A stretch of DNA of 63,811 nt, filler included, from Octopus bimaculoides (Eukaryota): the NCBI RefSeq assembly GCF_001194135.2. It is 5 parts of 5 records of this genome, joined end to end, with 100 filler letters (N's around TTAATTAATTAA, not from the genome) between each part and the next. Parts side by side here need not be neighbours in the genome. Positions count along the whole stretch, not along the records: positions 38,625 to 58,609 come from NC_068995.1; 4 more parts are not named here. One strand, written 5' to 3'. Each line of letters begins with the position of its first letter. Within the stretch, counting starts at the first letter, position 1. Both the position numbers and the translations under genes were made by a program. Below the pieces are notes generated by a model. It made no database searches. It was not told where the DNA came from and was given only the letters and a program-made list of their open reading frames with translations. Below are positions 28,920-51,877 of the stretch, piece by piece.

Positions 28920-31900
28920 ATATTTATGTGCGTATAAATATATGTACATGTATGTACATGTGTGCGTGCGTGCAGGTATTGTCTTTGTGTCTGCATTTGT
29001 TTCCAACAACCGCAGTTAGTGTGCTTATATTCCCATAAACTAGCGGTTCGGTAAAATAAATCGAGAGAATAAATACCAAGCTTGAAAAAACCTCTGGGAT
29101 CCATTAATTCGAATAAAAATTCACCGTGGCCGCAGTTAAATGACTGAAGAAGCTTGCTTCCAAACCACATGGTTTCCTGTTCAGTTCCACTGTGAAGCGC
29201 GTTGGGCAGTTGTGTCTTCTACTATAGTCTTGGGTCGACCAAACTTTGTGAGTCGATTTGGTAGACGGAAACGGGAAGACGCCCGTCGTATATATACTAT
29301 TTACTCTTTGCTTGTGTCAGTCATTTGACTGCGGCAATGCTGGAGTACCACCTTTAGTGGAGCAAATCGACCCCAGGACTTATTCTTTGTAAGCCTAGTA
29401 CTTATTCTATCAGTCTCTTTTGCCGAACCGCTAGTTTACGGGGACGTAAACACACCACTATCGGTTGTCAAGCGATGTTGGGGAGACAAACACAGACACA
29501 CAAACACACACACACACANNNNNNNNNNNNNNNNNNNNNNNNNNNNNNNNNNNNNNNNNNNNNNNNNNNNNNNNNNNNNNNNNNNNNNNNNNNNNNNNNN
29601 NNNNNNNNNNNNNNNNNNNNNNNNNNNNNNNNNNNNNNNNNNNNNNNNNNNNNNNNNNNNNNNNNNNNNNNNNNNNNNNNNNNNNNNNNNNNNNNNNNNN
29701 NNNNNNNNNNNNNNNNNNNNNNNNNNNNNNNNNNNNNNNNNNNNNNNNNNNNNNNNNNNNNNNNNNNNNNNNNNNNNNNNNNNNNNNNNNNNNNNNNNNN
29801 NNNNNNNNNNNNNNNNNNNNNNNNNNNNNNNNNNNNNNNNNNNNNNNNNNNNNNNNNNNNNNNNNNNNNNNNNNNNNNNNNNNNNNNNNNNNNNNNNNNN
29901 NNNNNNNNNNNNNNNNNNNNNNNNNNNNNNNNNNNNNNNNNNNNNNNNNNNNNNNNNNNNNNNNNNNNNNNNNNNNNNNNNNNNNNNNNNNNNNNNNNNN
30001 NNNNNNNNNNNNNNNNNNNNNNNNNNNNNNNNNNNNNNNNNNNNNNNNNNNNNNNNNNNNNNNNNNNNNNNNNNNNNNNNNNNNNNNNNNNNNNNNNNNN
30101 NNNNNNNNNNNNNNNNNNNNNNNNNNNNNNNNNNNNNNNNNNNNNNNNNNNNNNNNNNNNNNNNNNNNNNNNNNNNNNNNNNNNNNNNNNNNNNNNNNNN
30201 NNNNNNNNNNNNNNNNNNNNNNNNNNNNNNNNNNNNNNNNNNNNNNNNNNNNNNNNNNNNNNNNNNNNNNNNNNNNNNNNNNNNNNNNNNNNNNNNNNNN
30301 NNNNNNNNNNNNNNNNNNNNNNNNNNNNNNNNNNNNNNNNNNNNNNNNNNNNNNNNNNNNNNNNNNNNNNNNNNNNNNNNNNNNNNNNNNNNNNNNNNNN
30401 NNNNNNNNNNNNNNNNNNNNNNNNNNNNNNNNNNNNNNNNNNNNNNNNNNNNNNNNNNNNNNNNNNNNNNNNNTATATATATAGCTAGTCGGGTTAATGA
30501 ATGAAAATATATTTCTTGGTGGCTATATGAAAAATTATGTGAACAACACCCGTGGACAGTTCTGCAGTTCTGCAGTTACTTTTTTCTTGGACACAGTAAA
30601 AATAAAAATAAAATCTTTTTGTGTGTTCAAACTATATACGAGAGAGTGTACCTAACCGGCCAGTAGAATCTTTTTCCACTTTCGATCACCCAGTCACTAT
30701 GAGCTGCACCGTGGTTGGATAACGCGTTAAGCTCAAGTGTGGATTGTTGGTGGTCATGAATTGTCACGAGTATGTAACTGACGGGGATATGCATATTTTT
30801 CACCAACGCACACACATACAAATACACATATGCATATGTAAGATTTGTATGTAAATCAATTCCCATCTTTAGATGTTTGGATCTTTCTTGCAAGGAAGGA
30901 GGTGACTTGTAGCACCGTTACAAATCTCCATCGTTAGACTATAGTTAGCAATACAATGCTGCTCTTACCCTTGCCGATTGTATTTATAATGTACGTGTTA
31001 GCTGTTTAATTTATTTTTCAGATTATCACTAAGGCAATTACTAACAACACCAAACGCACCAAACATTATTTTTGCAAATTTGAATTTCACATCTGTGTAT
31101 AGAGACTGAATGTTTCTGAGAAAGTGTCTATTGTTCTTCTTTGACTCTGTGTTTCGAAGACATTCACATAAGCAAGCCAGGTAACCTGTGTATAAGTAAT
31201 ATTTTCCGTGTCAATCCCACCAAAATATACCTAGTCTAATATGCTTGCACTAGGTAAACGATTTGATGTGCATGTTCTACCAAGATCAAGTGTGCTATTG
31301 TTTACTTATGCATTCAGTAACACCGAATTCTCGATATTTATCCCCAAACATTCTTCTCCAGATGGCTTTGTATATTGGTATAGCAACAACTTCATGTCAC
31401 AATTATAGATGACATTTATGGGTGCCTTGATGACGTTTTGGGGTACTGTTTATACGTAGGTGTAAGTTGTTATGAGTATATTCTAGCAAATATGTTTCGT
31501 ACGGTTGAATCGTTCTGTATACCTCATATCACATTCAAAATTTATGATGATGTTGAGGTTTAGTGTCATGTAATCTAATCGGGGCCAACTACTGAACATA
31601 GAGAGTGAGTGAGAGATAAAGACATTATGTGTGTGTTCGTGCGTATGTGCGTGTGTGTGTATGCGCGCGTATTTAGCAAACATTGCCATTAAGACACATG
31701 GTCGTTGCATCCGAAGCAAAAATAGCTACAAAATATGTCTGACATTTTATTAAAGATTCTAACATTATGAAAATCCTTAATCTGGTCAAAACATATTGAA
31801 TTGGATATTAAATAAATTATTAGACAAATGTTCACATCATCCCTCAAATTATAACGATACAGGTACATGTTGATATTATATAGACAGCAATACAAAACAT

Positions 31901-34900
31901 TCTAGATAGATAGTCTAACGGAAACGTATCAAAGCAGACAATCGTCTATTAAGAAATATCAGACCAACAGTCTTCAAATTAGTGCCTCTCGAATAGAAGA
32001 ATAAAAGAACCCTTTAAATGTGCACCAATACACACTGTCTCTGAAATACTGTTGTAATCATCGTGTGTATATATGATGTCTTATCATCAGAGTGCACTAT
32101 CGTAAGAGATCCATTCTACACATCACCATTTACACAAACAGGCCGGGAAAAACTGATTTAATATAACACTCACGCACACACATGCACACACACGCACACA
32201 CACATTTACACATACACCCACGCATAGAAACGTAAACACACACACATATACATGTCAAAAGTATATTCGCAAAAATCTCATACAGTGTAAATTTCCTCAA
32301 CAAATGAATCGATCCATTGTACTCTTATTGTATGGAAGCTGTGAATAAACTATCAAGTTGCTGAACCAAGAAATAAGATCTATAAGGTAGGTTGACGACA
32401 TCAACGACTAGTGTCCACATATAAGTGAGACAATTCTATGTCATCGCTTTTGATATCACTATGCGTGCACGACCTTAGAAGTCTCAAATTAGTATGTGTA
32501 TTATTATTGAACCGGACTAATCGATATCATGCTAAAGGTGGTTCTATCATTCTTGTCATTTAAATTTTAGGATTGAACAAGATCTGTGAAATCTAATACT
32601 GTATCTACAAAATTATTCGCGTTTTTGCGTCAGTCGACAGAACTCATTTTATCCAGTTTGCAAAGCAACTTGGGAAAACGGGTGTTGTTTAATAAGTGTG
32701 GAAAACGTAACATCATTACAAAGAAAGATTTAATAAAGAACATTTTCAACATAGCGGAAAAGGACGCGAACTAAACGCGAAATGACAAAACGAATCATTT
32801 TGAAATATGGGTAATAACATTTTTCATCTCATGTCAATGTAGTTACACAATAAAAATAGACAATATAAACAACATATATACTACTGCAATATAATCAATC
32901 TGTCAGATACGCATGAATAATATAGTTAGAGACCAGTTGATATTCTTGTGTTGCGGAATGCATGAAATTAAAAATATATTGAGCGTGTTTCTAATTCCCA
33001 TAGATAAGGAGTTTATCAAACGAAAATGAATTATCATCCTTTCGAGGATATTTTTGTTTTGTACAATTATGTATTTGCTTTGTTTGGAAATAATCTCACC
33101 AGTACGTCAATCACTGAGTACAAATTAGTTAAGAATCAGTAAACTGAAATGTGTTCCTGGAATAGATTAGTTTCACATATCAGTGAGTTACTAACATATC
33201 TGAGCATTGAAGTATACTACACTTCAGCTTGGCATTAATCAAATAGTTTCTGCAGGTTACCGCAAGGAACTACTTGAGATTCATGACATGTAGACTCTAC
33301 ATATGTTCGAAGGTATCTTGGATCTGAAGCAGTATTATGCCTGCAAAGAGTGGCAACATTTAATTAAGCATATAAGTTCTCAACCTGACAATTGTTATTC
33401 CACTAAAATTAGAATTAGACAAATCCAGATATGTAAAATAAATTATGCAGGAAGATACAAAATTTTGGGGTCAAGTACACTATCATATAAAACATTTGTC
33501 CAGTTTATCTCATTTTGAGTTAGGTCTCATCCGTGTCTTATATAAGCTATTTATCCATTCTATTCACTTGTCTATCAACATGGTATAATTTCTTTAATTC
33601 TGTGTATCAGACTAAAAGTATGTTCGCGTCTGACTTTGGTAATTGTGACTGATTTGATATCATTGTATGTCACATCAGGCATTCTCCATATTAAACTGGC
33701 TAGTTCGATACCATGTTTAGGGTTTGCTACATGCTTATACAGCAAAACTTAATATCACGCTGAATTTTGTACATGTGGATACACACTGACTTTTCTGGAC
33801 TCTCCATTTAGGTGTATACCTTCAGTCGTTTCAGTGCAATTATTGGAATATTTTGCACACTTGATGTAAGTCTCTTCTTTCTTCGATGTTTTGTGTCATT
33901 GTACTGATCCAGTGCATTTAAAATCAATCATTTTGTGTTTGCTTTAACACGGTTGTCTTTAGCTACTTCCGTTTCCTACTGCCTTGTTTATCGACTTTTC
34001 TCGTAGTTCATTTCTTTCTTCTTCTGTTGGGGAGGATGCATTCTATTTTCAGCAATATGAAATTCCATACGGATGCCATATCTTAAAACTTTGTTCTGTT
34101 AGCTTGCGACTGTCTAAATCTATTATCGTTTGTTAATAATAATTTTTTTCTTCCTTCTACACGTAGAATATTCTTTTACTCAACTCCCCTCACCGCAACA
34201 GTTAGTTACCTTTCCCTTGCATGTTCTTGGTTCCCTTGCAAGTACTTTGTAGAATACTTGATTCAAGTACCATTTTCTCAAAGTGCAAATTAGGTACGTC
34301 CTACGTATACCAATGTCGCATGGAATCTTTCGAATCCTACTTTTATGTCTTTTTTTTTTTGGTTTGCATGACTAAAATCTTCAATTATCTTATATTACAG
34401 TTTATGTGGTCGCGAACTTGGGATATTTAGATTATTTCGTATAGATTATATTTTATGTAGAATAGGTATCAGTGTATTTTCCAAAATTAGTCTGAATCTG
34501 ATTAATTTCTTGTATTCATTTCTAATTTACAAACCTAGTTTTGTGTCTGGTGCCTTATCGATATATCTACTCTGGGTGTGAGTTCAATACTCATCATGGA
34601 TTTCGGTATTAGGATCAAATTCAATAATGATCTAACTTATTGGTCTCAACATACATTAATTTGCATAATGCTCTAAGAGATTTAGCTCATATTTTGCGCA
34701 TAAATTTATTTGCCGATACTAATTAAACTCGTGAAATATATTTTATAAATTTTACGTCTCGGTTCTATTCTCAAATAATAGTTCAATAATAGTTCCACTA
34801 AGGAGGATTTTTGTAGTATATTGCCTGTGCTATTTACAATCTTTGAGACATCATCATCATCATCATCATCATCATCAGTAGCAGGAATAGCAGCAGGAGC

Positions 34901-39120: not shown

Positions 39121-39192
39121 CCAACTTCAGGTAGTAAATTACTATACTCTCGAGGGGAGGTACTTTCTGGGAAATTGGACAAAATTGCCAAC
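39121..39192 (-). CDS. NBAS: NBAS exon: LAILSNFPESTSPREYSNLLPEV(G)
   Basis: Acceptor tttttaaag, donor gtatgt; 72 nt, phase 2-2. Matches LAILSNFPETTSPHEYSVLLPE at the start of the Sec39-like region. Confidence 0.96.
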
Positions 39193-40689
39193 CTTTAAAA
39201 ATAAAATTGATTAAAATATTGTGTAATTATAAATTCAAATTTATTGTATAATTATGAATTTAAATCAAAAATAAAAAAAAATATTCTAATGAAGAATAAA
39301 TAGCTCATATTGAATACAAAATTAATTGGAATTTATTTTTTTGGTTTTGTTTGTTTTGTTTTCACTTGTTGAATCTGGAAGAATGAACAGTACTCGTGTC
39401 CTTTGCAGACCCTCTAAAAATGATTAAGGATAGGGGTAAGAGGATGAAGCAAGAGAAGATAAGGTTGAGTTTGAATTATTGCAGGTTTTAATTGGAGGTA
39501 GGGGGAGGAGAATAAGAAAAAGAGGGAAAACCCCAGAAAGAAAAAGCTCCGAAAAAAATTATTCAAGTAAAAACATGTAAACATAACCTGAGTTAGAAAA
39601 AGAAAACAAAAGTATGAGTAGAGATAAAGGTAAACAACTAGAAGAGCAGACATAATGATTATAAGTCTCTACCGTGACAATAATAGAAATGAATTTAAAT
39701 AGTTAATTTAGTTGATGGACAAAAACAGGAAAAAACTACTAGTCAGATAACATTGTTCTAGATAAAGCCAAGAATTACAAGTAGTATGGAACTGTAAGTA
39801 AATCTAATATAATAAATGTGAAAACTAATTTTTGTGTGTCAGTGTGTCACACTTAGACCCTTCTCTTACTATTCAATGACACTCCTACTTGTAGTAAAGA
39901 GTGTTTGTCAACATAACATGGCAGTCCTGGTTTAGGACTAATGTTGGTGTAATTTAGACCCAAGAGACAATGTCTCCTGGGGCTAAATTTTTACTACAAA
40001 GTACTGTTGCTGAATATCTCATGTTGTGAGATTTAGAAATAGTAATTTTCTGACACTCTTACTATTCCTCATGATGGGGTGAGAGTAATAGTAGGCATAG
40101 AGATGGTGAGGGCGGTGGTGAAGATAGAGAGAGAAAGAAAAAGAGGAGAGAAAAAGAGACATNNNNNNNNNNNNNNNNNNNNNNNNNNNNNNNNNNNNNN
40201 NNNNNNNNNNNNNNNNNNNNNNNNNNNNNNNNNNNNNNNNNNNNNNNNNNNNNNNNNNNNNNNNNNNNNNNNNNNNNNNNNNNNNNNNNNNNNNNNNNNN
40301 NNNNNNNNNNNNNNNNNNNNNNNNNNNNNNNNNNNNNNNNNNNNNNNNNNNNNNNNNNNNNNNNNNNNNNNNNNNNNNNNNNNNNNNNNAATATATCTAA
40401 TACAATAAATGTGAATGTCAGTGCGTCACACTTTTTCAGCTTTAATAAATCCTTTCTACTGGAAGCATATCGACCCAGTACATAACAGGTACTAATTTTA
40501 TTGACCCTTGAAAGGATAAAAGACAAAGTCGACCTTGGCGGAATTCAAACCCAAAACCTAACAGCAGACAAAATACCACTAAGCATTTTGTCCAGCGTGC
40601 TAATGATTCTGCCACCTCACTGCCTTAATATAATATAATAAATGTGAATGTCAATGTGTCACACTTTTTCAACTTTATTCCTAGAGGTC

Positions 40690-41179: not shown

Positions 41180-41244
41180 CTGTGAGGTAAAACTGCAGAT
41201 CCATGATAGGTAAATAATGCTTCGACAGCTACAACTTCACTGTC
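41180..41244 (-). CDS. NBAS: NBAS exon: DSEVVAVEALFTYHGSAVLPH(R)
   Basis: Acceptor gttttacag, donor gtttgt; 65 nt, phase 0-2. Carries the LFTYHGS..LPHR motif. Confidence 0.94.
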
Positions 41245-42663
41245 CTGTAAAACAACATTTTAACTTCATTATTTTTTTTTTCTCAATTACAACTGAATAC
41301 AAAAAAAACATTAGGAAGACATTTTAAAGAGCTACATGAGTTTATAAATCCAGATTAACTTCAGATTCAACATTATTCAGTGACTGAAGAAATTTATCCC
41401 TCAAAAGACAGTGGTCTATTACCAAGTAATATTCCTAGGTGATCTGAGGCATGGAAAATAAAAGTTCTAGCCAAGTACCTTTAGTGAATATGAACTAACA
41501 GCCTAGGAGTTGCAAGTTCAAATATCAGATCTTCCTATTTGTTTCACCTCTATATTATTTCCAATATAACTACAATATATTTTAAAGTTTAGTTTTCAAG
41601 TAATAGGGATGAGTTAGCTAAGAATGTAACTCTTCATAAGATAACCAAGCCAAGATATCAGCCCACCAATTTTTGTACTAGAAAGATTTAAAAAGTTGAT
41701 CATTTCAAGAACCTTTTAACAATGATGATTATGCACCAATATGTATGTGTGACTGAAAAAAGACCCCTCTACCATCATTCTAAAGTCAAAACTATCCCTT
41801 ATGGTCACCACCTTCCTGGTTGGTGCAGTTCCCTACTCTGAAGATCTGGAAGTATGAGAGACAATTTTGTTCAATAGGGAGCTGTTCAACAGTTGCTCAA
41901 ACTGCTGAAAATAGCAGCCAAAGTTCTTACAAATCACACCCTACCATCATAACTGCAATTGATGTTGTACAATAGAGTTCCAGATAAGCAAACAACATGA
42001 GTGTCAGAACTGAAACATCTTTCATCGTTGTTTTGTTTGACTATGAATGATCTAGGAATACACAGCAATGACAAAACAGGTCAAGTTTCTGCTACTTGGG
42101 AACTTGACCCTCAAGATTCCCTCAAATCACACTCTGCCATCTTCAGATAAGAAATTACACACTAAAAGGCAGCAACCTGGCAGAATTGGAACCACACCAG
42201 ACAAAATGCTTAGCAGTATTTTTTTTATTTTATGAGTTATAATGTACTCGAACACTGCATACAAGATCATTATTATTATTATTAAAATTATAACCCTATA
42301 AATATAAACAAAGGAATTCAGATAATTTTTACAAATTTTCAAACAACTTGTTTTATTCTACTTGCATCTGATTTTATTCCACATTTTTTGACTTGTATTT
42401 TGTATATTCATTCTACTTATATCTTGCATCTTCTTTAGTGTAGAAGCATTAATAGGCTACATCACAAATTGAATTGCTTTTAAAGTTCATTAATTCATTT
42501 GTCTCCATTGCTTATGATAAACACCTTGTTTATTTGAGAATGCATTAAGTAGTGTATATGGAATATTTACTTCAGCAACTTGTACATATATTTGTTCAAA
42601 GAATATGGAAAACACACAAGAAGAAAAATGTTTTGCTTTAATTGCCAGCAAACAGAATCTAAC

Positions 42664-42768
42664 CTGAGCAAATTTAATAGCCTCCTCTACTATGTTTCCT
42701 GAACGAAAAGTTTCAAAAAACACTTTATCAAAACGTTCTTGTGCAACATGGATGCCACCTAAAATAAG
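42664..42768 (-). CDS. NBAS: NBAS exon: LILGGIHVAQERFDKVFFETFRSGNIVEEAIKFAQ
   Basis: Acceptor cttttccag, donor gttaga; 105 nt, phase 0-0. Matches NBAS EILG...QRYDAEFFKKFRNQNIVLSARTYAQ. Confidence 0.94.
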
Positions 42769-43562
42769 CTGGAAAAGAAAAAGTTACATTAAAACATCCA
42801 GTCAATAAAAGTAAAACAATCACAAAATCAGCAGCAGCATCATCATTTAACCCTTTAGTATTCAGATTACTCTGTCAAGTGAATGTAATGATTGTTTATT
42901 CACAATCTGAATTAGTCATGCATTATCTTGTAACTTTGCAATTTCAATGAAATGACGTTATTTAATCACCCCATTCATTCATATAACCCATCATACTAAC
43001 ATATACTATCGTAACCTGTAACTATTAATTCTTCAAATAATCTTCAAACCATAATTCCCAAAAAATTAGTTCTCCCTTCCTGTTTCATGTTTTCGCCATT
43101 GTTCTCTAAAATTTGTATGCATTCTTGTTTTACTTTATGTCTCACTGTTGCCATATTTCTCTCCCCAACAGTAAACTGGTCATTGCTTGTTCGCGATGCA
43201 CCCACCCAACCTGCCCCCACCAACTATACCAGGAATCTTTTCTCAATACTGGAAACCCCTACAGGGCTATGCCTTGCTTCTGCACCAGAAGACTTTCATA
43301 CCTTTGTCCCTCCTTCCCCACACTACTGCATGCACCAAAAGGTGATACGTTATTGAGGAAATTATTAGTAAATTAACAAACCACCTACCCCTTTCTTCCT
43401 ATATATAATGGACTAACCAATAGCAGGTTGACTGAAGCAAGATAATAGATAAAAGACACACACAAAATGGGCTTCTATACAGTTTCCATTTAGTAAATTT
43501 CACTCAGTTTAGATAATAAAAAAGTAGAAATACTGATGTTGAATGAAAATTAAAATGTCTAC

Positions 43563-43641
43563 CTCATATGTCCTCAATCGGTACAGATACTGCAATAATT
43601 TCAGCCGAGCTCTGCAAAGTTCTTTCTGTTCTAATAACAGT
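43563..43641 (-). CDS. NBAS: NBAS exon: LLLEQKELCRARLKLLQYLYRLRTYE
   Basis: Acceptor tttcttacag, donor gtagac; 79 nt, phase 2-0. Matches NBAS LTLEQKELCRCRRKLLTYLDRLATYE. Confidence 0.95.
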
Positions 43642-44208
43642 CTGTAAGAAAAAGAAAAAAAAAAAAGAAGAATGTAGGCTTAAATTCCACTAAAATAACA
43701 GGATGGTCATGTCTAGAGTGCCTTACACTATTTTTAATACTGTCCCAAGTCCTAAGACTCATACAGCCGGTTAAGCAGTTTCAATGACATATAAATGACC
43801 AACATCACAACGTTCTTCCTAGATGGGATACCAATCTATCACAGGGTTACTCATTTACAGCTGAATAGACTGGAGCAATGTGAAATGAAGTGTTTTACTC
43901 AAGAACATAATGCACTGCCTGTCTGGGAATTGAAACCATGAGATTGCATTCATGAGTGCAAAACCCAAACCACTAAGCCACATGTCTTCACTTATACCCA
44001 TAGGTCTGTAAAATCAAGGCTGATCTAGGACTGAACAACAACTCCTTTTATAAGCACATTCCAACAAAACAAAAAACTACCTTGCAACAATTCAGTCTGA
44101 ACTATTTCATAAGTTTTTCCTATAATCATTCAGAGTGTGATAACATGAAAAGAAAGTTATAGGCATTGTCTGTCCACTTCATTTTTATTTGCTTAATAAC
44201 CTGTCTAC

Positions 44209-44287
44209 TACGTATGTCCTCATTCAGTACATATACTGCAATAGTTTCAGCTGTGCTCTGCAAAGCTCTTTCTCTTCTAATAACAGT
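44209..44287 (-). pseudogene. NBAS: Duplicated NBAS exon with in-frame TGA (LLLEEKELCRAQLKLLQYMY*MRTYV); pseudo-exon or poison exon
   Basis: 68/79 nt identical to 43563-43641. Same acceptor (ttctttttcttacag); GT donor retained at the same position. Confidence 0.85.
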
Positions 44288-44467
44288 CTGTAAGAAAAAG
44301 AACCCTTATGGCTCATCACCATTATTTTAGCGTTCTTTCTAGCTCCACCCATTCTGATGGAAGCAATAAAAGAATAGATACGTATAACTGTTTATGAACA
44401 CACATTTAAGATATAGTGTAGGGGGGAGTACACTGTGGTGGTCTTACGAAGAGAAAAGTTAGGCACA

Positions 44468-44702
44468 AGGCGGCGAGCTGGCAGAAACGTTAGCACACCG
44501 GGCGAAATGCTTAGCGGTATTTCGTCTGCCGCTACGTTCTGAGTTCAAATTCTGCCGAGGTCAACTTTGCCTTTCATCCTTTCGGGGTCTATTAAATAAG
44601 TACCAGTTACGCACTGGGGATCGATATAATCGACTTAATCCGTTTGTCTGTCCTTGTTTGTCCCCTCTGTGCATAGCCCCTTGTGAGCAATAAAGAAATA
44701 AG
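44468..44702 (+). mobile_element. tRNA-derived SINE family 1, young copy
   Basis: ggcggcgagctggcagaaacgttagc...gttcaaattc (B-box-like)...aaagaaataag; CpGs intact. Related copies at ~11340-11690(+), 36180-36440(+), 40450-40625(-), 53835-54060(+), 55085-55290(+), 55865-56080(-). Confidence 0.85.
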
Positions 44703-44960
44703 AAAAGTTAGGCATAAGAGGAATAGATGTGTGCAAGAGAAGACTGTGCATGTGATGTGTATGGATGAGACAGTTGCATTAAGAAGTGTTGATCACTTGA
44801 AGTGGATAGAACTTGTGGAAAAGGGAAATCCAGGAAGACAAGAGACAAAGTATTAAAGGTTGTTCTAAAAACACTGATCCTTATGAAGGAGATGACAAAG
44901 GACTGAGATATTTGGTACATTGCTGTTCTCAAGAAGACCCATCCACCACAGCAGAATTGA
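44703..44960 (+). mobile_element. RTE LINE ORF2 3' end
   Basis: Decayed KLGIRGI..QE.R, CIKKC, GTCGKGKSRKT and MTKD.DIW motifs typical of the RTE C-terminus. Confidence 0.75.
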
Positions 44961-44970
44961 CACCGGTGTT

Positions 44971-45503
44971 GGTGCCGCATAAATAGGACTCGCGACGGTG
45001 CCGCATAAATAGGACTCGCGACGGTGCCGCATAAATAGGACTCGCGACGGTGCCGCATAAATAGGACTCGCGACGGTGCCGCATAAATAGGACNNNNNNN
45101 NNNNNNNNNNNNNNNNNNNNNNNNNNNNNNNNNNNNNNNNNNNNNNNNNNNNNNNNNNNNNNNNNNNNNNNNNNNNNNNNNNNNNNNNNNNNNNNNNNNN
45201 NNNNNNNNNNNNNNNNNNNNNNNNNNNNNNNNNNNNNNNNNNNNNNNNNNNNNNNNNNNNNNNNNNNNNNNNNNNNNNNNNNNNNNNNNNNNNNNNNNNN
45301 NNNNNNNNNNNNNNNNNNNNNNNNNNNNNNNNNNNNNNNNNNNNNNNNNNNNNNNNNNNNNNNNNNNNNNNNNNGTGCCGCATAAATAGGACTCGCGACG
45401 GTGCCGCATAAATAGGACTCGCGACGGTGCCGCATAAATAGGACTCGCGACGGTGCCGCATAAATAGGATTCGTGACGGTTCCACATAAATAGGACCCAT
45501 GAT
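44971..45503 (+). repeat. 26-bp minisatellite (GGTGCCGCATAAATAGGACTCGCGAC)n, gap inside
   Basis: Seven exact units visible, plus a partial unit and two degenerate units, around a ~280-N gap. Confidence 0.97.
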
Positions 45504-45680
45504 GGTGCCAGGTTAAAAGCACCCAGTACACTCTGCAAAGTGGTTGGCATTAGGAAGAGTATCCAGCCATAGAAACCCTGCCAAAAGAGACAATGGAACC
45601 TGGTGCAGCCCCCAGCCTTATTTGCTCCTGTCAAACAGATCAACCCATGCCAGCACGGTAAATGGATGTTATAAGAAGAG
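45480..45680. mobile_element. RTE-tail non-autonomous repeat (also 52700-53170 and 54360-54660)
   Basis: Shared blocks aaagcacccagtacactctg, gtggttggcattaggaag, gctcctgtcaaac..tccaacccatgccagca and a (cat)n tail. Confidence 0.65.
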
Positions 45681-46262
45681 AAATGAAAATGAAGATTATA
45701 ATTTTTAGAGAATGGTAAACTGGGATGTTCAAACATGACTTTCAGAAGTATGAAATGAGTCAGGGAAATCAAAATGTTTTCATACAGGAACCAAAACCAA
45801 TTTTCAGACTTTGAGGTATTCACACCCTTCGCAGACTTACTAATAAAAAAGGGTAAAAAAACCCACTTTAAACGAAAAAAAGACAGCTAGCCAAGGTCCA
45901 CCAGAATCTGTGAGGAGAACATAAAAGGTAATCATGTCCTTAATGGATCAATATATTAAACTGATAAGAGATAGTAAACTGTTGTTAATTGATCAATTCT
46001 AAACATTTGGAAGAACTTCTAGAACTGACTAAACATACTATAGTCAGCAGTAATAACTGTCATATTTCTAAATGTTGCAGGCGACCAAACATTCTGTATA
46101 TGATGAACAAGTGTTCAACTTACACATGATAAATTTTCATAGTAACTAAAACAGTTAATACCTAAACATGATTAACTCCTGTAAGAGATAAAACAACTGC
46201 TAATAATTACAATGACATGTATAATGCTATTACATTTTTTCACAGTAAATAAAATAGGCGAT

Positions 46263-46301
<39 letters not shown>

Positions 46302-46308
46302 CACATAC

Positions 46309-46492
46309 TTTTTTTGTGGATTAAGGCTACCTTTCGTTTCATATCAAGGAACCCCTTAACAATTATCAAGCCTATCACATGGAACATTGATGTTCAATGG
46401 AGATGAAGACCAATGTTCCATGTGATAGGCTTGATAATTGTTAAGGGTTTCCTTAACATGAAATGAATGGTAGCCTTAATCCACAAATAAAG
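46309..46492. repeat. Long inverted repeat (hairpin) in an NBAS intron
   Basis: Perfect 37-bp stem 46353-46389 / 46411-46447 with a 21-nt loop; imperfect extension to about 80 bp. Confidence 0.95.
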
Positions 46493-46659
46493 AATCTTTA
46501 ACATTCATTCTCATTGAAGTAGTTGTATGTTGTCACTTAATGTGACAGTCCCTGAAGGGAATAATACTACTGTTGTTTAGACAGCATACAACTACTTCAT
46601 CGTATCACTACTGCATAAATCTCTCAGAGATTTAGAAATGTATTATTTCTAAATTCATT

Positions 46660-46703
<44 letters not shown>

Positions 46704-47292
46704 GTCATACATATATTCGTTATAGAATTAAGGATAAAATGACTTTAATGATTTTATCAAGTGGTCAGCATGTGATAAAAACCTCATAAGTAATTTCTAT
46801 TTATAATTATATACATAATTATATCAAAGGGGTTGGAAAACCTCTCCATACACTAGACATAGATGCCAGATGACACTAAAAACCACCTTATATCTCCTCT
46901 AGCACAGGTTGTAAATGGGCAAATGAAAAATAGTAAATACAATTTTCCAGTTAATTGTGTATCGGACCAATTTCGAACTAAAAGTAATAAAATACTTACT
47001 GCTCTCTTCAGCACAAATATATATATACATATTCATATGAACACCAAAGCCACATGACCATACACATACATTTGCACGTATATATACTAGTGCAACTCGA
47101 ATTTACATTTTTTATTTCAACCCCATGCTATTTATCAAAATAATATCACAGCAAATGTGATTTTGATCAGGAGCAAAAATATTTTTATTTATATTCTTTA
47201 TAGAATTAAGGATAAAATCACTTTAATGATTTTATCAAGTGGTCAGTGTGTAATAAAAACCTCATATATACATACAGTGTGTATATACTCAC

Positions 47293-47442
47293 GAACGAAA
47301 ATCTATCTGATTGAGCAATTCTTCTCTTCTTTGAAATATTTTATCTTGTCTTCTTTGAATGCAAAGTGCATTGAAAGGATCATAGTCTTCTTCATCTTCA
47401 TCACTGTCATATATTAAATCCTCATCATCACACATCACTAGT
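47293..47442 (-). CDS. NBAS: NBAS exon (acidic linker): LVMCDDEDLIYDSDEDEEDYDPFNALCIQRRQDKIFQRREELLNQIDFR(S)
   Basis: Acceptor atctttcag, donor gtgagt; 150 nt, phase 2-2; keeps frame. Ends like NBAS KRQELLKLVNFS. Confidence 0.9.
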
Positions 47443-47682
47443 CTGAAAGATAATTCAACAAATTAAGTTATAAACATATTTGGAAACAGTTTATCAGTAA
47501 AATGGATGAGATATAGTTGGTCAAATCAATAGTGTGTCAGATTACCAACCAGTCCAAAGTTAAGTGGTAGAGGTTCAAACCATTTAATAGTAAATAGATA
47601 TCATGGGAACCAGGAAATCAGAGAAAGTTCCTGCTACTTAACCCTTTAATATTCAGTTTATTCTATCAAATGTAATGCTTGT

Positions 47683-49478: not shown

Positions 49479-49630
49479 CTTCCTCCATCTTCTCTTTTGG
49501 CAATTGCAATCATGGCTTGTAAATCAGTTCCTTTCAGTCCATATTCCATTAGTTCTCGGAGAGCATTTATGGTATCCGGTACTCGTTCAAGGCATTCATG
49601 AAGGACCCAGGAACGTTTGCTTATTTTACG
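49479..49630 (-). CDS. NBAS: NBAS exon: RKISKRSWVLHECLERVPDTINALRELMEYGLKGTDLQAMIAIAKREDGG(R)
   Basis: Acceptor atattttag, donor gtaaat; 152 nt, phase 0-2. Carries the KRSWVLHECLERVP...YGLKGTDL motif of NBAS. Confidence 0.96.
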
Positions 49631-50330: not shown

Positions 50331-51054
50331 TAATGGTAGTGCAGCCAGCATGACAAGAACTCCTGGCTAAAACTGACAATAGAAGAATAAAATAATTCAA
50401 CTTGAAAAGAGAAATGAAAAATCAATTGGAAGGAAGTCAATTATAGACAAAGTAGTTATTAATAGAAAGCACATGGCTCGGTGGTTAAAGCGTTGGGCTC
50501 ACAATCATGAGATAGTGAGTTCGATTCCAGACTGAGCTGTGTGTTGTGTTCTTGAGCAAAACACTTTATTTCATGTTGTTCCAGTTCACTCAGCTGTAGA
50601 AATGAGTTGTGACGTCACTGGTGCCAAGCTGTATCAGCCTCTGCTTTTCCTTTGGAAAACATCAGTAGCATGGAGAGGGGAGGCTGGTATGCATGGGCGA
50701 CTGCTGGTCTTCCATAAACAACCTTGACTGGATTTGTGTCTAGGAGGGAAACTATGTGCAATCCCATAGTCATTCATGACTGAAGGGAGTCTTTACACTT
50801 TAACCCTTTAGTTGTTAATAAATATTGATTAGGTCTGATGAGATAGACAATATACTATAAAGGAACTAAAAACTTGTTCTAATAGTTTCCAGCACATTTC
50901 ATCAATACCAGCAGGATCAAATGAATGAAAACAAATACAAAACAACAAAACACTGAATAAAGGCCACAAAATAAATCCTTTACTATAAAAGTATTTTGTT
51001 TTGCTTGTAAATTATATCCTATCCTGCTAACCCAAACAAGATAGAATTTATTAT

Positions 51055-51751: not shown

Positions 51752-51877
51752 CAAGTAATCTTCAATTGAAGCTATAGATACAGGGGACTTCTGCCACTGG
51801 CGTTGGTACACTAAATCACAATCCAAACCATAAGCTTTTGCAAGTGCAAGAGCTTCTCCATATTCTTCATTATCAAT
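51752..51877 (-). CDS. NBAS: NBAS exon: IDNEEYGEALALAKAYGLDCDLVYQRQWQKSPVSIASIEDYL
   Basis: Acceptor tttcacag, donor gtaagt; 126 nt, phase 0-0. Matches NBAS IESEEYEEALSLAHTYGLDTDLVYQRQWRKS. Confidence 0.96.

What the first reader, a model, noticed from the sequence alone, without database searches (positions are those of the whole stretch)
43563..44287. Tandemly duplicated NBAS exon whose upstream copy has a premature stop: candidate poison exon in an NMD factor
Seen: two 79-nt copies, 68/79 identical (4 synonymous changes, CGA->TGA). The acceptor is identical for 15 nt and the GT donor is kept, but homology ends about 7-15 nt into the introns. Confinement to exon plus splice sites is more typical of selection on splicing (mutually exclusive exons) than of a neutral block duplication. 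Known: NBAS/SMGL-1 acts in NMD with DHX34, and NMD factors are often feedback-regulated by NMD. Inference: inclusion of 44209-44287, alone or with the second copy (frameshift), would yield an NMD substrate and could autoregulate NBAS.
Basis: partly seen in the sequence, partly recalled or inferred. Interest (0 to 1): 0.72.

Follow-up and report, generated by a model that had tools for sequence, protein, structure and literature searches.

The report
Decaying intronic copy of NBAS exon
An intron of the Octopus bimaculoides NBAS gene holds a roughly 100-base copy of the neighbouring 79-base exon that carries a stop codon, but the copy is missing from two other octopods and mutates like junk DNA, so it is most likely a dead exon duplicate and not a regulatory "poison exon".

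Summary
On the minus strand, 44287-44209 (copy A) and 43641-43563 (copy B) are 68/79 identical. The 15 nt before the acceptor and 7 nt after the donor are identical, and no homology is detectable beyond that. A carries CGA>TGA at 44226-44224.

The gene is NBAS of Octopus bimaculoides: the spliced window peptide matches XP_014782851.1 at 249/249 residues. B is the constitutive exon in every annotated cephalopod isoform.

The selection argument and the poison-exon reading are not supported.
- The O. sinensis and Argonauta hians NBAS loci each have a single copy, the B orthologue.
- Polarised with these outgroups, A has 10 private changes against 1 in B. Six are non-synonymous, including the stop and hits on residues conserved out to vertebrates. 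This fits neutrality and rejects exon-like constraint.
- A's homologous donor became GTA|gtagac, which scores below all 62 real octopod NBAS donors. A moderate cryptic donor lies 8 nt downstream.
- A sits in a repeat-rich, gap-containing 2.4-kb block that O. sinensis lacks at that position. The 52 nt just upstream of A are orthologous to a site downstream of B in O. sinensis.

The sharp homology edges therefore mark a short copied patch, not selection. Any inclusion of A would give a PTC transcript, but that could not be tested here. Verdict: a lineage-restricted pseudo-exon, of low interest.

The parts
44197..44302 (-). Copied patch containing copy A: 15 nt of polypyrimidine tract plus AG, the 79-nt exon equivalent (44287-44209), and 7-12 nt of donor intron.
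   Evidence: 101-106 nt at 88-89% identity to 43551-43656. Homology stops sharply at both ends.
44224..44226 (-). In-frame TGA in copy A. B, O. sinensis and the inferred ancestor have CGA; Argonauta has AGA. This is a CpG-to-TpG transition.
44199..44209 (-). Donor region of copy A. The homologous donor GTA|gtagac (exon end 44209) scores -2.57 bits. A cryptic donor CAG|gttatt (exon end 44201) scores 5.92 bits and would give an 87-nt exon.
   Evidence: PWM built from 62 real octopod NBAS splice sites. 0/62 real donors score below the homologous donor and 10/62 below the cryptic one.
43563..43641 (-). Copy B, the constitutive 79-nt NBAS exon (LLLEQKELCRARLKLLQYLYRLRTYE). Acceptor 17.8 bits, donor GAG|gtagac 2.4 bits.
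   Evidence: Orthologues are O. sinensis L002 32689-32767 and Argonauta L001 31170-31248.
47293..47442 (-). Upstream NBAS exon E2 (…LVMCDDEDLIYDSDEDEEDYDPFNALCIQRRQDKIFQRREELLNQIDFR-S), donor gtgagt.
42664..42768 (-). Downstream NBAS exon E4 (LILGGIHVAQERFDKVFFETFRSGNIVEEAIKFAQ).
44304..44355 (-). Flank immediately 5' of copy A. It is 92% identical to O. sinensis L002 33232-33283, a site about 465 nt downstream of exon B in that species.
43905..46317 (-). Block of about 2.4 kb with no counterpart at this position in O. sinensis. It holds a (TG)n run, a TE fragment, 26-nt tandem arrays around an N gap, SINE2, copy A and the 5' half of SINE1.
43847..43990 (-). tRNA-derived SINE (SINE1) between A and B. 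It is contiguous across the 43905/43904 synteny breakpoint. O. sinensis keeps only its 3' half.
44467..44700 (-). Second SINE-family copy (SINE2) upstream of copy A. It is multi-copy in both Octopus loci.
51752..51877 (-). NBAS exon E1 (IDNEEYGEAL…IEDYL).
49479..49630 (-). NBAS exon E1b (RKISKRSWVLHECLERVP…EDGG).
41180..41244 (-). NBAS exon E5 (DSEVVAVEALFTYHGSAVLPH).
39121..39192 (-). NBAS exon E6 (LAILSNFPESTSPREYSNLLPEV).
57005..57074 (-). NBAS exon E0 (LVNRTYQLVCLRSTTPEELYAQK).

Best explanation
Copy A is a lineage-restricted pseudo-exon. A short patch of about 101-106 nt was copied from genomic DNA or pre-mRNA into a nearby intronic site of O. bimaculoides NBAS. The patch ran from 15 nt upstream of the acceptor to 7-12 nt past the donor of the constitutive 79-nt exon. 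The copying mechanism is inferred: template switching or short-patch repair inside a repeat-rich, rearranging intron. Since then the copy has drifted neutrally. It picked up a CpG>TpG nonsense mutation, five further amino-acid replacements at conserved residues, and an AG>TA change that wrecked its homologous 5' splice site. It has no demonstrated function. If the spliceosome occasionally uses its still-decent acceptor, most plausibly with the cryptic donor 8 nt downstream, the product carries a premature stop and would be removed by NMD as splicing noise. The sharp confinement of homology to 'exon plus splice sites' reflects the size of the copied patch, not selection.
For: Shown by tools:
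- The gene is O. bimaculoides NBAS, and B is the exon used by all annotated Octopus, Argonauta and cuttlefish isoforms and by the Logan cuttlefish-cluster transcript ORFs inspected (P0159, P0284, P0288). None contains the A peptide.
- O. sinensis (L002) and Argonauta hians (L001) have only one copy, the B orthologue.
- Polarisation shows 7 unambiguous A-derived changes against 1 B-derived. With O. sinensis added, A has 10 private changes against 1 (relative-rate P = 0.012).
- All six amino-acid differences and the stop are on the A branch, at residues conserved in Argonauta, cuttlefish, Haliotis, Mytilus and turtle.
- The A branch has 6 non-synonymous and 4 synonymous changes. This fits neutrality (P = 0.18) and differs from the functional exon's 2:16 pattern (Fisher P = 0.011). 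Under exon-like constraint, P(>=6 of 10) = 2.5e-4.
- A's homologous donor scores -2.57 bits, below all 62 real donors, and 142/269 intronic GTs score at least as well.
- No flank homology exists beyond -15 and +7 to +12, although the A branch is only about 10% diverged, so neutral flanks would still align if they had been copied.
- Relative to O. sinensis, A is a discrete insertion right after ...GAGCCATAAGG.
- A purely intronic 77-nt duplicate with equally sharp edges lies in the same intron.
- The copy includes intron bases, so it is not a retrocopy of spliced mRNA.
Against: - No RNA data could be examined, so inclusion of A at a regulated level in O. bimaculoides is not excluded.
- A's acceptor is still of median quality (10.2 bits; only 5/233 intronic AGs score as well or better, a count that includes exon B's real acceptor and A's own site), and a usable cryptic donor exists (5.9 bits).
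- The 22 splice-flank bases carry no change. That is mildly unexpected under neutrality (P about 0.06).
- A's branch (10 changes in 101 nt) is longer than expected for an origin at the bimaculoides/sinensis split (4.4 expected, P = 0.015; P = 0.08 without the two CpG transitions). The SINE1 continuity also suggests that O. sinensis lost the block by deletion. The copy may therefore be older than the split and have persisted in one lineage.
- Only two other species could be checked.
- The order of A relative to B rests on a gap-containing short-read assembly.
Confidence: 0.75

Rival explanations
1. Copy A is a functional, lineage-specific poison exon. It is included in a regulated fraction of O. 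bimaculoides NBAS transcripts, introduces a PTC, and lets NMD activity feed back on NBAS levels.
For: Any inclusion would give a PTC far upstream of many exon junctions and a very long 3' UTR (sequence). NBAS mRNA is part of an NMD feedback loop in human, zebrafish and C. elegans, and human NBAS has PTC-generating splice forms (PMC3783168). A keeps a median-strength acceptor and has a cryptic donor. The 22 splice-flank bases are unchanged (P about 0.06).
Against: The copy is absent from the O. sinensis and Argonauta NBAS loci, so there is no conservation, which is the hallmark of established poison exons. The substitution pattern is neutral and the last two exonic bases of the donor were lost. 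It lies in a TE- and gap-rich block whose position is not even syntenic. No annotated isoform uses it, although NMD isoforms are rarely annotated as proteins.
Confidence: 0.08
2. A is the relic of a once-functional mutually exclusive exon pair (A/B) that was recently inactivated by the CGA>TGA mutation.
For: The 79-nt length is not a multiple of 3, which would enforce mutual exclusivity through frameshift and NMD. Both copies have AG...GT boundaries and the same phase. Tandem exon duplicates are a known source of mutually exclusive exons (PMC9013439, PMC9741552).
Against: Functional duplicated-exon pairs are ancient and change conservatively (PMC9741552). Here the copy is missing in O. sinensis and Argonauta. 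All non-synonymous changes are on A and hit residues invariant from octopus to vertebrates, such as Q>E in EQKELC, R>Q, and E>V in TYE. A's N:S pattern rejects exon-like constraint (P = 2.5e-4). Synonymous divergence between A and B is low (pS 0.22-0.28) while the flanks are unalignable, which contradicts an old duplication maintained by selection.
Confidence: 0.04
3. The arrangement, and possibly the position of A upstream of B, is an assembly artefact of the gap-containing short-read O. bimaculoides assembly. The real copy may lie downstream of B, in the B-E4 intron, or the block may be a chimeric join at repeats. This rival concerns position only and is compatible with the best explanation.
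For: Both synteny breakpoints fall in repeats: the (TG)n run at 46262-46298 and SINE1 at 43905/43904. The block contains an N gap flanked by 26-nt tandem arrays. The 52 nt next to A are orthologous (92%) to a site downstream of B in the long-read O. sinensis assembly, while the positional counterpart in O. bimaculoides (43428-43065) barely aligns (z about 2).
Against: The sequence of A itself, with 11 differences from B, cannot be produced by mis-joining. SINE1 reads through the breakpoint in register, and O. sinensis has only its 3' half, which equally fits a real deletion in O. sinensis. The order of the two segments shared with O. sinensis is not restored by simply moving the block.
Confidence: 0.2

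Closest known systems
Unannotated intronic duplicates of neighbouring exons (tandem exon duplication relics or pseudo-exons; Letunic et al. 2002 as cited in PMC9013439; Ivanov & Pervouchine 2022)
   Same: It is a copy of an adjacent coding exon lying in the flanking intron, in the same orientation and with AG/GT boundaries. It is not in the annotation, and expression is possible only at low level.
   Different: Only about 100 nt were copied, without surrounding intron. The flank is orthologous to another part of the gene in a sister species, so this is not a simple head-to-tail duplication. The copy carries a stop and a degraded donor.
Mutually exclusive exon pairs derived from tandem exon duplication (for example PMC9741552, PMC5740500)
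   Same: Two homologous exons of equal length and phase lie in the same gene. The length is not divisible by 3, so double inclusion would shift the frame.
   Different: Functional pairs are ancient, conserved across phyla, and differ by conservative substitutions. This copy is confined to one lineage, has a stop codon, and evolves neutrally.
Poison exons and AS-NMD autoregulation (SR-protein ultraconserved poison exons; NMD-factor feedback, PMC3783168)
   Same: Inclusion would introduce a PTC into the mRNA of a factor that itself takes part in NMD.
   Different: Established poison exons are highly conserved, often together with their flanking introns. NMD-factor feedback described so far is attributed to features such as long 3' UTRs and uORFs. 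This element shows no conservation and no evidence of inclusion.
Pathogenic or cryptic pseudo-exons in human NBAS (Rius et al. 2019, cited in PMC8819188)
   Same: It is an intronic NBAS sequence with near-functional splice sites whose inclusion would truncate the protein.
   Different: The human cases arise from point mutations that activate unrelated intronic sequence, not from a duplicated exon.

Membership tests
NBAS gene (neuroblastoma-amplified sequence / NRZ tethering complex subunit) | The spliced product is orthologous to named NBAS proteins. | tested here: met
   The 249-aa spliced peptide gives 744 phmmer hits. Hits are named NBAS in Argonauta, Haliotis, Patella, Mytilus and turtle. 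It matches O. bimaculoides XP_014782851.1 at 249/249. Exon lengths match the Argonauta gene model.
Tandem exon duplication (head-to-tail segmental duplication of exon plus intron) | Two homologous exon copies lie in direct orientation in neighbouring positions of the same gene. | tested here: met
   68/79 identity, same strand, 646 nt apart.
Tandem exon duplication (head-to-tail segmental duplication of exon plus intron) | The duplicated unit includes flanking intron, so the inter-copy sequence is homologous to a flank of the other copy. | tested here: not met
   No flank homology above the shuffle background. A's 5' flank is orthologous to a different site of the O. sinensis gene.
Mutually exclusive exon pair | Both copies keep an open reading frame and evolve under purifying selection. 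| tested here: not met
   A has an in-frame TGA. Its 6 N: 4 S private changes reject exon-like constraint (P = 2.5e-4).
Mutually exclusive exon pair | The pair is conserved in related species. | tested here: not met
   O. sinensis and Argonauta hians each have a single copy.
Mutually exclusive exon pair | Transcripts contain one or the other copy. | not testable with these tools
   No RNA-seq access. All annotated isoforms carry B only.
Poison exon (AS-NMD regulatory cassette) | Inclusion introduces a premature termination codon. | tested here: met
   The TGA at 44226-44224 is in frame after E2. Forms with A alone, A plus B, and the 87-nt variant all contain it.
Poison exon (AS-NMD regulatory cassette) | Both splice sites are functional. 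| tested here: inconclusive
   The acceptor scores 10.2 bits (median). The homologous donor scores -2.6 bits, below all 62 real donors. The cryptic donor scores 5.9 bits (16th percentile).
Poison exon (AS-NMD regulatory cassette) | The exon and its flanks are evolutionarily conserved. | tested here: not met
   Absent in O. sinensis and Argonauta. Substitution pattern is neutral.
Poison exon (AS-NMD regulatory cassette) | Inclusion is observed, and the isoform is stabilised when NMD is blocked. | not testable with these tools
   This needs RNA-seq or RT-PCR with NMD or translation inhibition.

The most novel reading that the evidence does not exclude
A short exon-plus-splice-site patch copied into an intron of O. 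bimaculoides NBAS has been recruited, in this lineage only, as a newborn poison exon. It uses its intact acceptor and the cryptic CAG|gttatt donor, and it couples NBAS output to NMD activity. This would be an example of a regulatory AS-NMD cassette created by exon duplication in an NMD factor. A still more remote variant is that cephalopod A-to-I editing recodes UGA to UGG and restores an open alternative exon.
Probability: 0.07. Interest if true: 0.6.

Novelty: new member of a known kind. Interest (0 to 1): 0.15.

Why it matters
As found, it matters little. It is one more intronic relic of exon duplication, in a repeat-rich octopus intron.

It is a useful cautionary case. Homology confined to "exon plus splice sites" can result from a short copied patch and need not indicate selection on splicing. 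A two-species comparison plus outgroup polarisation was enough to tell the two apart.

If the minority reading were true, it would show how a poison exon can be born from an exon duplicate in a gene of the NMD pathway itself. It would also give a tractable, lineage-specific test of NMD autoregulation in a cephalopod.

Tried and rejected
- **Short-query protein search.** The search for homologous proteins with a 111-aa (E2+B+E4) query returned nothing. A 600-aa O. bimaculoides query returned no cephalopod proteins, not even its parent. Absence of A-type transcript ORFs in that database is therefore uninformative.
- **Solved structures.** The PDB sequence search found no NBAS structure, only chance SRP68 hits at E about 0.5.
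- **Exact look-ups of window ORFs.** The A-containing 42-aa ORF and the E4-containing 77-aa ORF are not on record.
- **Other cephalopod loci.** DNA for the O. vulgaris, O. bimaculoides (other record) and Acanthosepion pharaonis loci was not returned because the genes exceed 100 kb. P0157 is not on record because it is not the longest isoform.
- **Relic copy in O. sinensis.** I tested for an internally deleted relic of the copy at the orthologous flank site (L002 33284-33340). The score is only marginal (P about 0.04-0.06 against A, not significant against B), so I did not count it as evidence.
- **Homology resuming after A.** The sequence after A does not significantly resume homology with O. 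sinensis (P = 0.09).
- **Single-event models.** Simple tandem-duplication, circle-reinsertion and single-translocation models were considered for the order of the shared segments. None fits all adjacencies, so the exact rearrangement is left open.
- **Non-coding RNA.** Rfam and tRNA scans of 42600-47500 found nothing.
- **Retrocopy origin.** Rejected, because the patch includes intron bases on both sides.
- **Haplotype-duplication artefact.** Rejected, because A and B differ at 14% of exon positions and have unrelated flanks.

Full report
**1. The observation**

The gene lies on the minus strand. Read that way, 44287-44209 (copy A) and 43641-43563 (copy B) are each 79 nt and share 68 identical positions.
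- The repeat finder reports 43551-43656 against 44197-44302 as 106 nt at 88%.
- blastn reports 101 nt at 89.1% with E = 3e-31.
- The 15 nt before the acceptor (TTCTTTTTCTTACAG) and the 7 nt after the donor (GTAGACA) are identical in both copies.
- Beyond that, gapped local alignments of every flank combination score no better than shuffled sequence.
- A reads LLLEEKELCRAQLKLLQYMY*MRTYV and B reads LLLEQKELCRARLKLLQYLYRLRTYE. The stop is TGA at 44226-44224, where B has CGA.

The last two exonic bases of A changed from AG to TA, and no flanking intron is duplicated.

**2. Gene and species**

I reconstructed eight exons from the piece:
- E0 57074-57005
- E1 51877-51752
- E1b 49630-49479
- E2 47442-47293
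- B 43641-43563
- E4 42768-42664
- E5 41244-41180
- E6 39192-39121

All have AG/GT boundaries and consistent phases. The 249-aa spliced peptide (E1 to E6) gives 744 phmmer hits. The sources name these hits NBAS or neuroblastoma-amplified sequence in Argonauta hians, Haliotis, Patella, Mytilus and a turtle. The peptide matches Octopus bimaculoides XP_014782851.1 and isoform X2 at 249/249 residues, and O. vulgaris/O. sinensis proteins at 243/249. The window is therefore O. bimaculoides NBAS.

Every annotated cephalopod isoform carries the B-type exon, and none contains the A peptide. This covers O. bimaculoides X1/X2, O. sinensis X1/X2, three O. vulgaris forms, Argonauta, Acanthosepion, and the Logan cuttlefish-cluster transcript ORFs inspected (P0159, P0284, P0288). 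The isoforms differ only at the termini and by one residue elsewhere. Protein annotations rarely list NMD isoforms, so this is weak evidence.

**3. Related species**

The Argonauta hians NBAS locus (L001, 82 kb) was retrieved, and all 56 coding junctions were solved exactly. It has one 79-nt exon (31170-31248) between the E2 and E4 orthologues. tblastn and blastn find no second copy.

The O. sinensis locus (L002, 91 kb) also has one copy (32689-32767), which is the B orthologue. Its flanks are 92-94% identical to B's flanks. Copy A hits only that same exon, at 89%.

The O. vulgaris locus, another O. bimaculoides record and the cuttlefish locus could not be fetched because the genes exceed 100 kb.

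**4. How copy A evolves**

With Argonauta as outgroup, 7 differences are unambiguously A-derived and 1 is B-derived. At three further sites B and Argonauta encode the same residue while A differs. Adding O. sinensis gives an inferred ancestral exon from which A differs at 10 positions, O. bimaculoides B at 1 and O. sinensis B at 1. The relative-rate test gives P = 0.012.

All six amino-acid replacements and the stop are on the A branch. They hit residues conserved from octopus to molluscs and vertebrates.

Nei-Gojobori counting gives 6 non-synonymous and 4 synonymous changes on A.
- This is compatible with neutrality (P = 0.18).
- It differs from the functional exon's 2:16 pattern over the octopus-Argonauta distance (Fisher P = 0.011).
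- It is very unlikely under exon-like constraint (P = 2.5e-4).

Both CpGs of B are TpG or CpA in A, and the stop is one of them. A has therefore never been under coding constraint for any appreciable time. This argues against a former mutually exclusive exon.

**5. Splice signals**

I built position weight matrices from 62 real donors and 62 real acceptors: 56 from Argonauta NBAS and 6 from this window, with B left out.

| Site | Score (bits) | Real sites scoring lower | Intronic GT/AG scoring at least as well |
|---|---|---|---|
| A acceptor | 10.2 (median quality) | 32/62 | 5/233 |
| A homologous donor GTA\|gtagac | -2.6 | 0/62 | 142/269 |
| A cryptic donor CAG\|gttatt, 8 nt downstream | 5.9 | 10/62 | 12/269 |
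| B donor GAG\|gtagac | 2.4 | 2/62 | 44/269 |
| B acceptor | 17.8 | 61/62 | 1/233 |

The 233 intronic AGs include the real acceptor of exon B and A's own site. The cryptic donor would give an 87-nt exon. Splice competence of A is therefore degraded but not abolished, and occasional inclusion is plausible.

**6. Why homology is confined to exon plus splice sites**

The A branch is only about 10% diverged. O. bimaculoides and O. sinensis introns in this region are still 91.8% identical over 2 kb. If flanking intron had been copied with the exon, it would still align, and it does not. The copied unit was therefore itself about 101-106 nt.

Three observations support a mutational rather than a selective explanation.
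- The 52 nt directly 5' of A (44355-44304) are 92% identical to O. sinensis L002 33232-33283. There the sequence continues without any exon copy, so A is a discrete insertion after ...GAGCCATAAGG.
- The same intron holds a purely intronic 77-nt duplicate (46712-46788 / 47190-47266, 93.5%) with equally sharp edges. It is shared with O. sinensis.
- The zero changes in the 22 splice-flank bases are only mildly unexpected (P about 0.06).

The patch includes intron bases on both sides, so it was not copied from spliced mRNA.

**7. An unresolved rearrangement**

Synteny with O. sinensis runs as follows (O. bimaculoides window coordinates, minus strand, against L002):
- 47500-46318 matches 31331-32437
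- 43904-43429 matches 32438-32903
- 43064-42600 matches 33577-34110

The 2.4-kb block 46317-43905 has no counterpart at that place. It contains a (TG)n run, a TE fragment, 26-nt tandem arrays around an N gap, a SINE, copy A and the 5' half of another SINE.

The site orthologous to A's 5' flank lies about 465 nt downstream of B in O. sinensis, not upstream. A second weak match (44786-44701 to 33405-33507) lies in the opposite order. The positional counterpart downstream of B in O. bimaculoides (43428-43065) barely aligns (z about 2).

The tRNA-derived SINE between A and B reads through the 43905/43904 breakpoint, while O. sinensis retains only its 3' half next to a conserved hairpin. This fits either a deletion in O. 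sinensis or a chimeric join in the short-read O. bimaculoides assembly.

A's branch is somewhat longer than expected for an origin at the species split (10 changes against 4.4 expected, P = 0.015; P = 0.08 without CpG sites). The copy may therefore predate the split and have been lost in O. sinensis. A possible internally deleted relic in O. sinensis is not significant (P about 0.05). No single simple event explains all adjacencies, and long reads are needed.

**8. Comparison with what is known**

Longman et al. (PMC3783168) show three things. NBAS acts with DHX34 in NMD. nbas/smgl-1 mRNA rises when NMD factors are depleted in zebrafish and C. elegans. Human NBAS has splice forms with PTCs.

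Intronic, unannotated duplicates of neighbouring exons are common in animals, and some are weakly expressed (PMC9013439). Functional duplicated-exon substitution pairs are ancient and conservative (PMC9741552). No paper in the library links NBAS to a described poison exon.

Copy A fits the first class. It fails the conservation and constraint criteria of the other two.

**9. Verdict**

The element is best explained as a lineage-restricted, neutrally decaying pseudo-exon produced by a short local copy event in a repeat-rich, rearranging intron (confidence about 0.75).

A lineage-specific poison exon remains possible (about 0.07-0.08) because RNA evidence could not be examined.

Novelty: a new member of a known kind. 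Interest: low.

Noticed in passing
window 46712-46788 and 47190-47266: A purely intronic 77-nt local duplicate (93.5% identity, 478 nt apart) lies just downstream of exon E2. Both copies are also present in O. sinensis (L002 31562-31638 and 32087-32157), so it predates the species split.
   Followed up: partly
window 46300-46500: An inverted repeat with 97-nt arms (89% complementary, 7-nt loop) sits in the E2-A intron. It is conserved in O. sinensis (L002 32207-32437) and borders the synteny breakpoint. It may be a palindromic TE or a structured intronic element.
   Followed up: no
window 44920-45548: Arrays of a 26-nt tandem repeat (GGTGCCGCATAAATAGGACTCGCGAC) lie on both sides of the assembly gap 45094-45374. 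The true array length is unknown.
   Followed up: no
window 43847-43990; also 50520-50607 and 52225-52338: A tRNA-derived SINE family has several copies in NBAS introns of both Octopus species. The copy between A and B is full-length in O. bimaculoides and 5'-truncated in O. sinensis.
   Followed up: partly
window 44467-44700; also 40467-40626, 53843-54003 and 55938-56079: A second SINE-like family is abundant in both Octopus NBAS loci and detectable in Argonauta.
   Followed up: no
window 43551-43670: The constitutive exon B pairs one of the weakest donors of the gene (GAG|gtagac, 2.4 bits) with the strongest acceptor tract (17.8 bits). The donor is conserved in O. sinensis, but Argonauta has gtaatg. 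This may be a case of compensating splice-site strengths.
   Followed up: partly
window 43065-43428 vs L002 32903-33577: This stretch of the B-E4 intron is almost unalignable between O. bimaculoides and O. sinensis, although neighbouring intron is about 92% identical. Pieces of the O. sinensis version instead match the block upstream of copy A.
   Followed up: partly
window 47380-47420 (exon E2): The acidic stretch of E2 (DSDEDEEDYD) differs by a codon indel and several replacements among O. bimaculoides, O. sinensis/vulgaris and Argonauta. It is a fast-evolving, low-complexity linker in NBAS.
   Followed up: no
tool behaviour: The word-indexed protein search did not return the Octopus NBAS proteins for 111-aa and 600-aa O. 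bimaculoides queries, but did for a 2334-aa Argonauta query. Negative results from that tool with short eukaryotic queries should not be trusted.
   Followed up: yes
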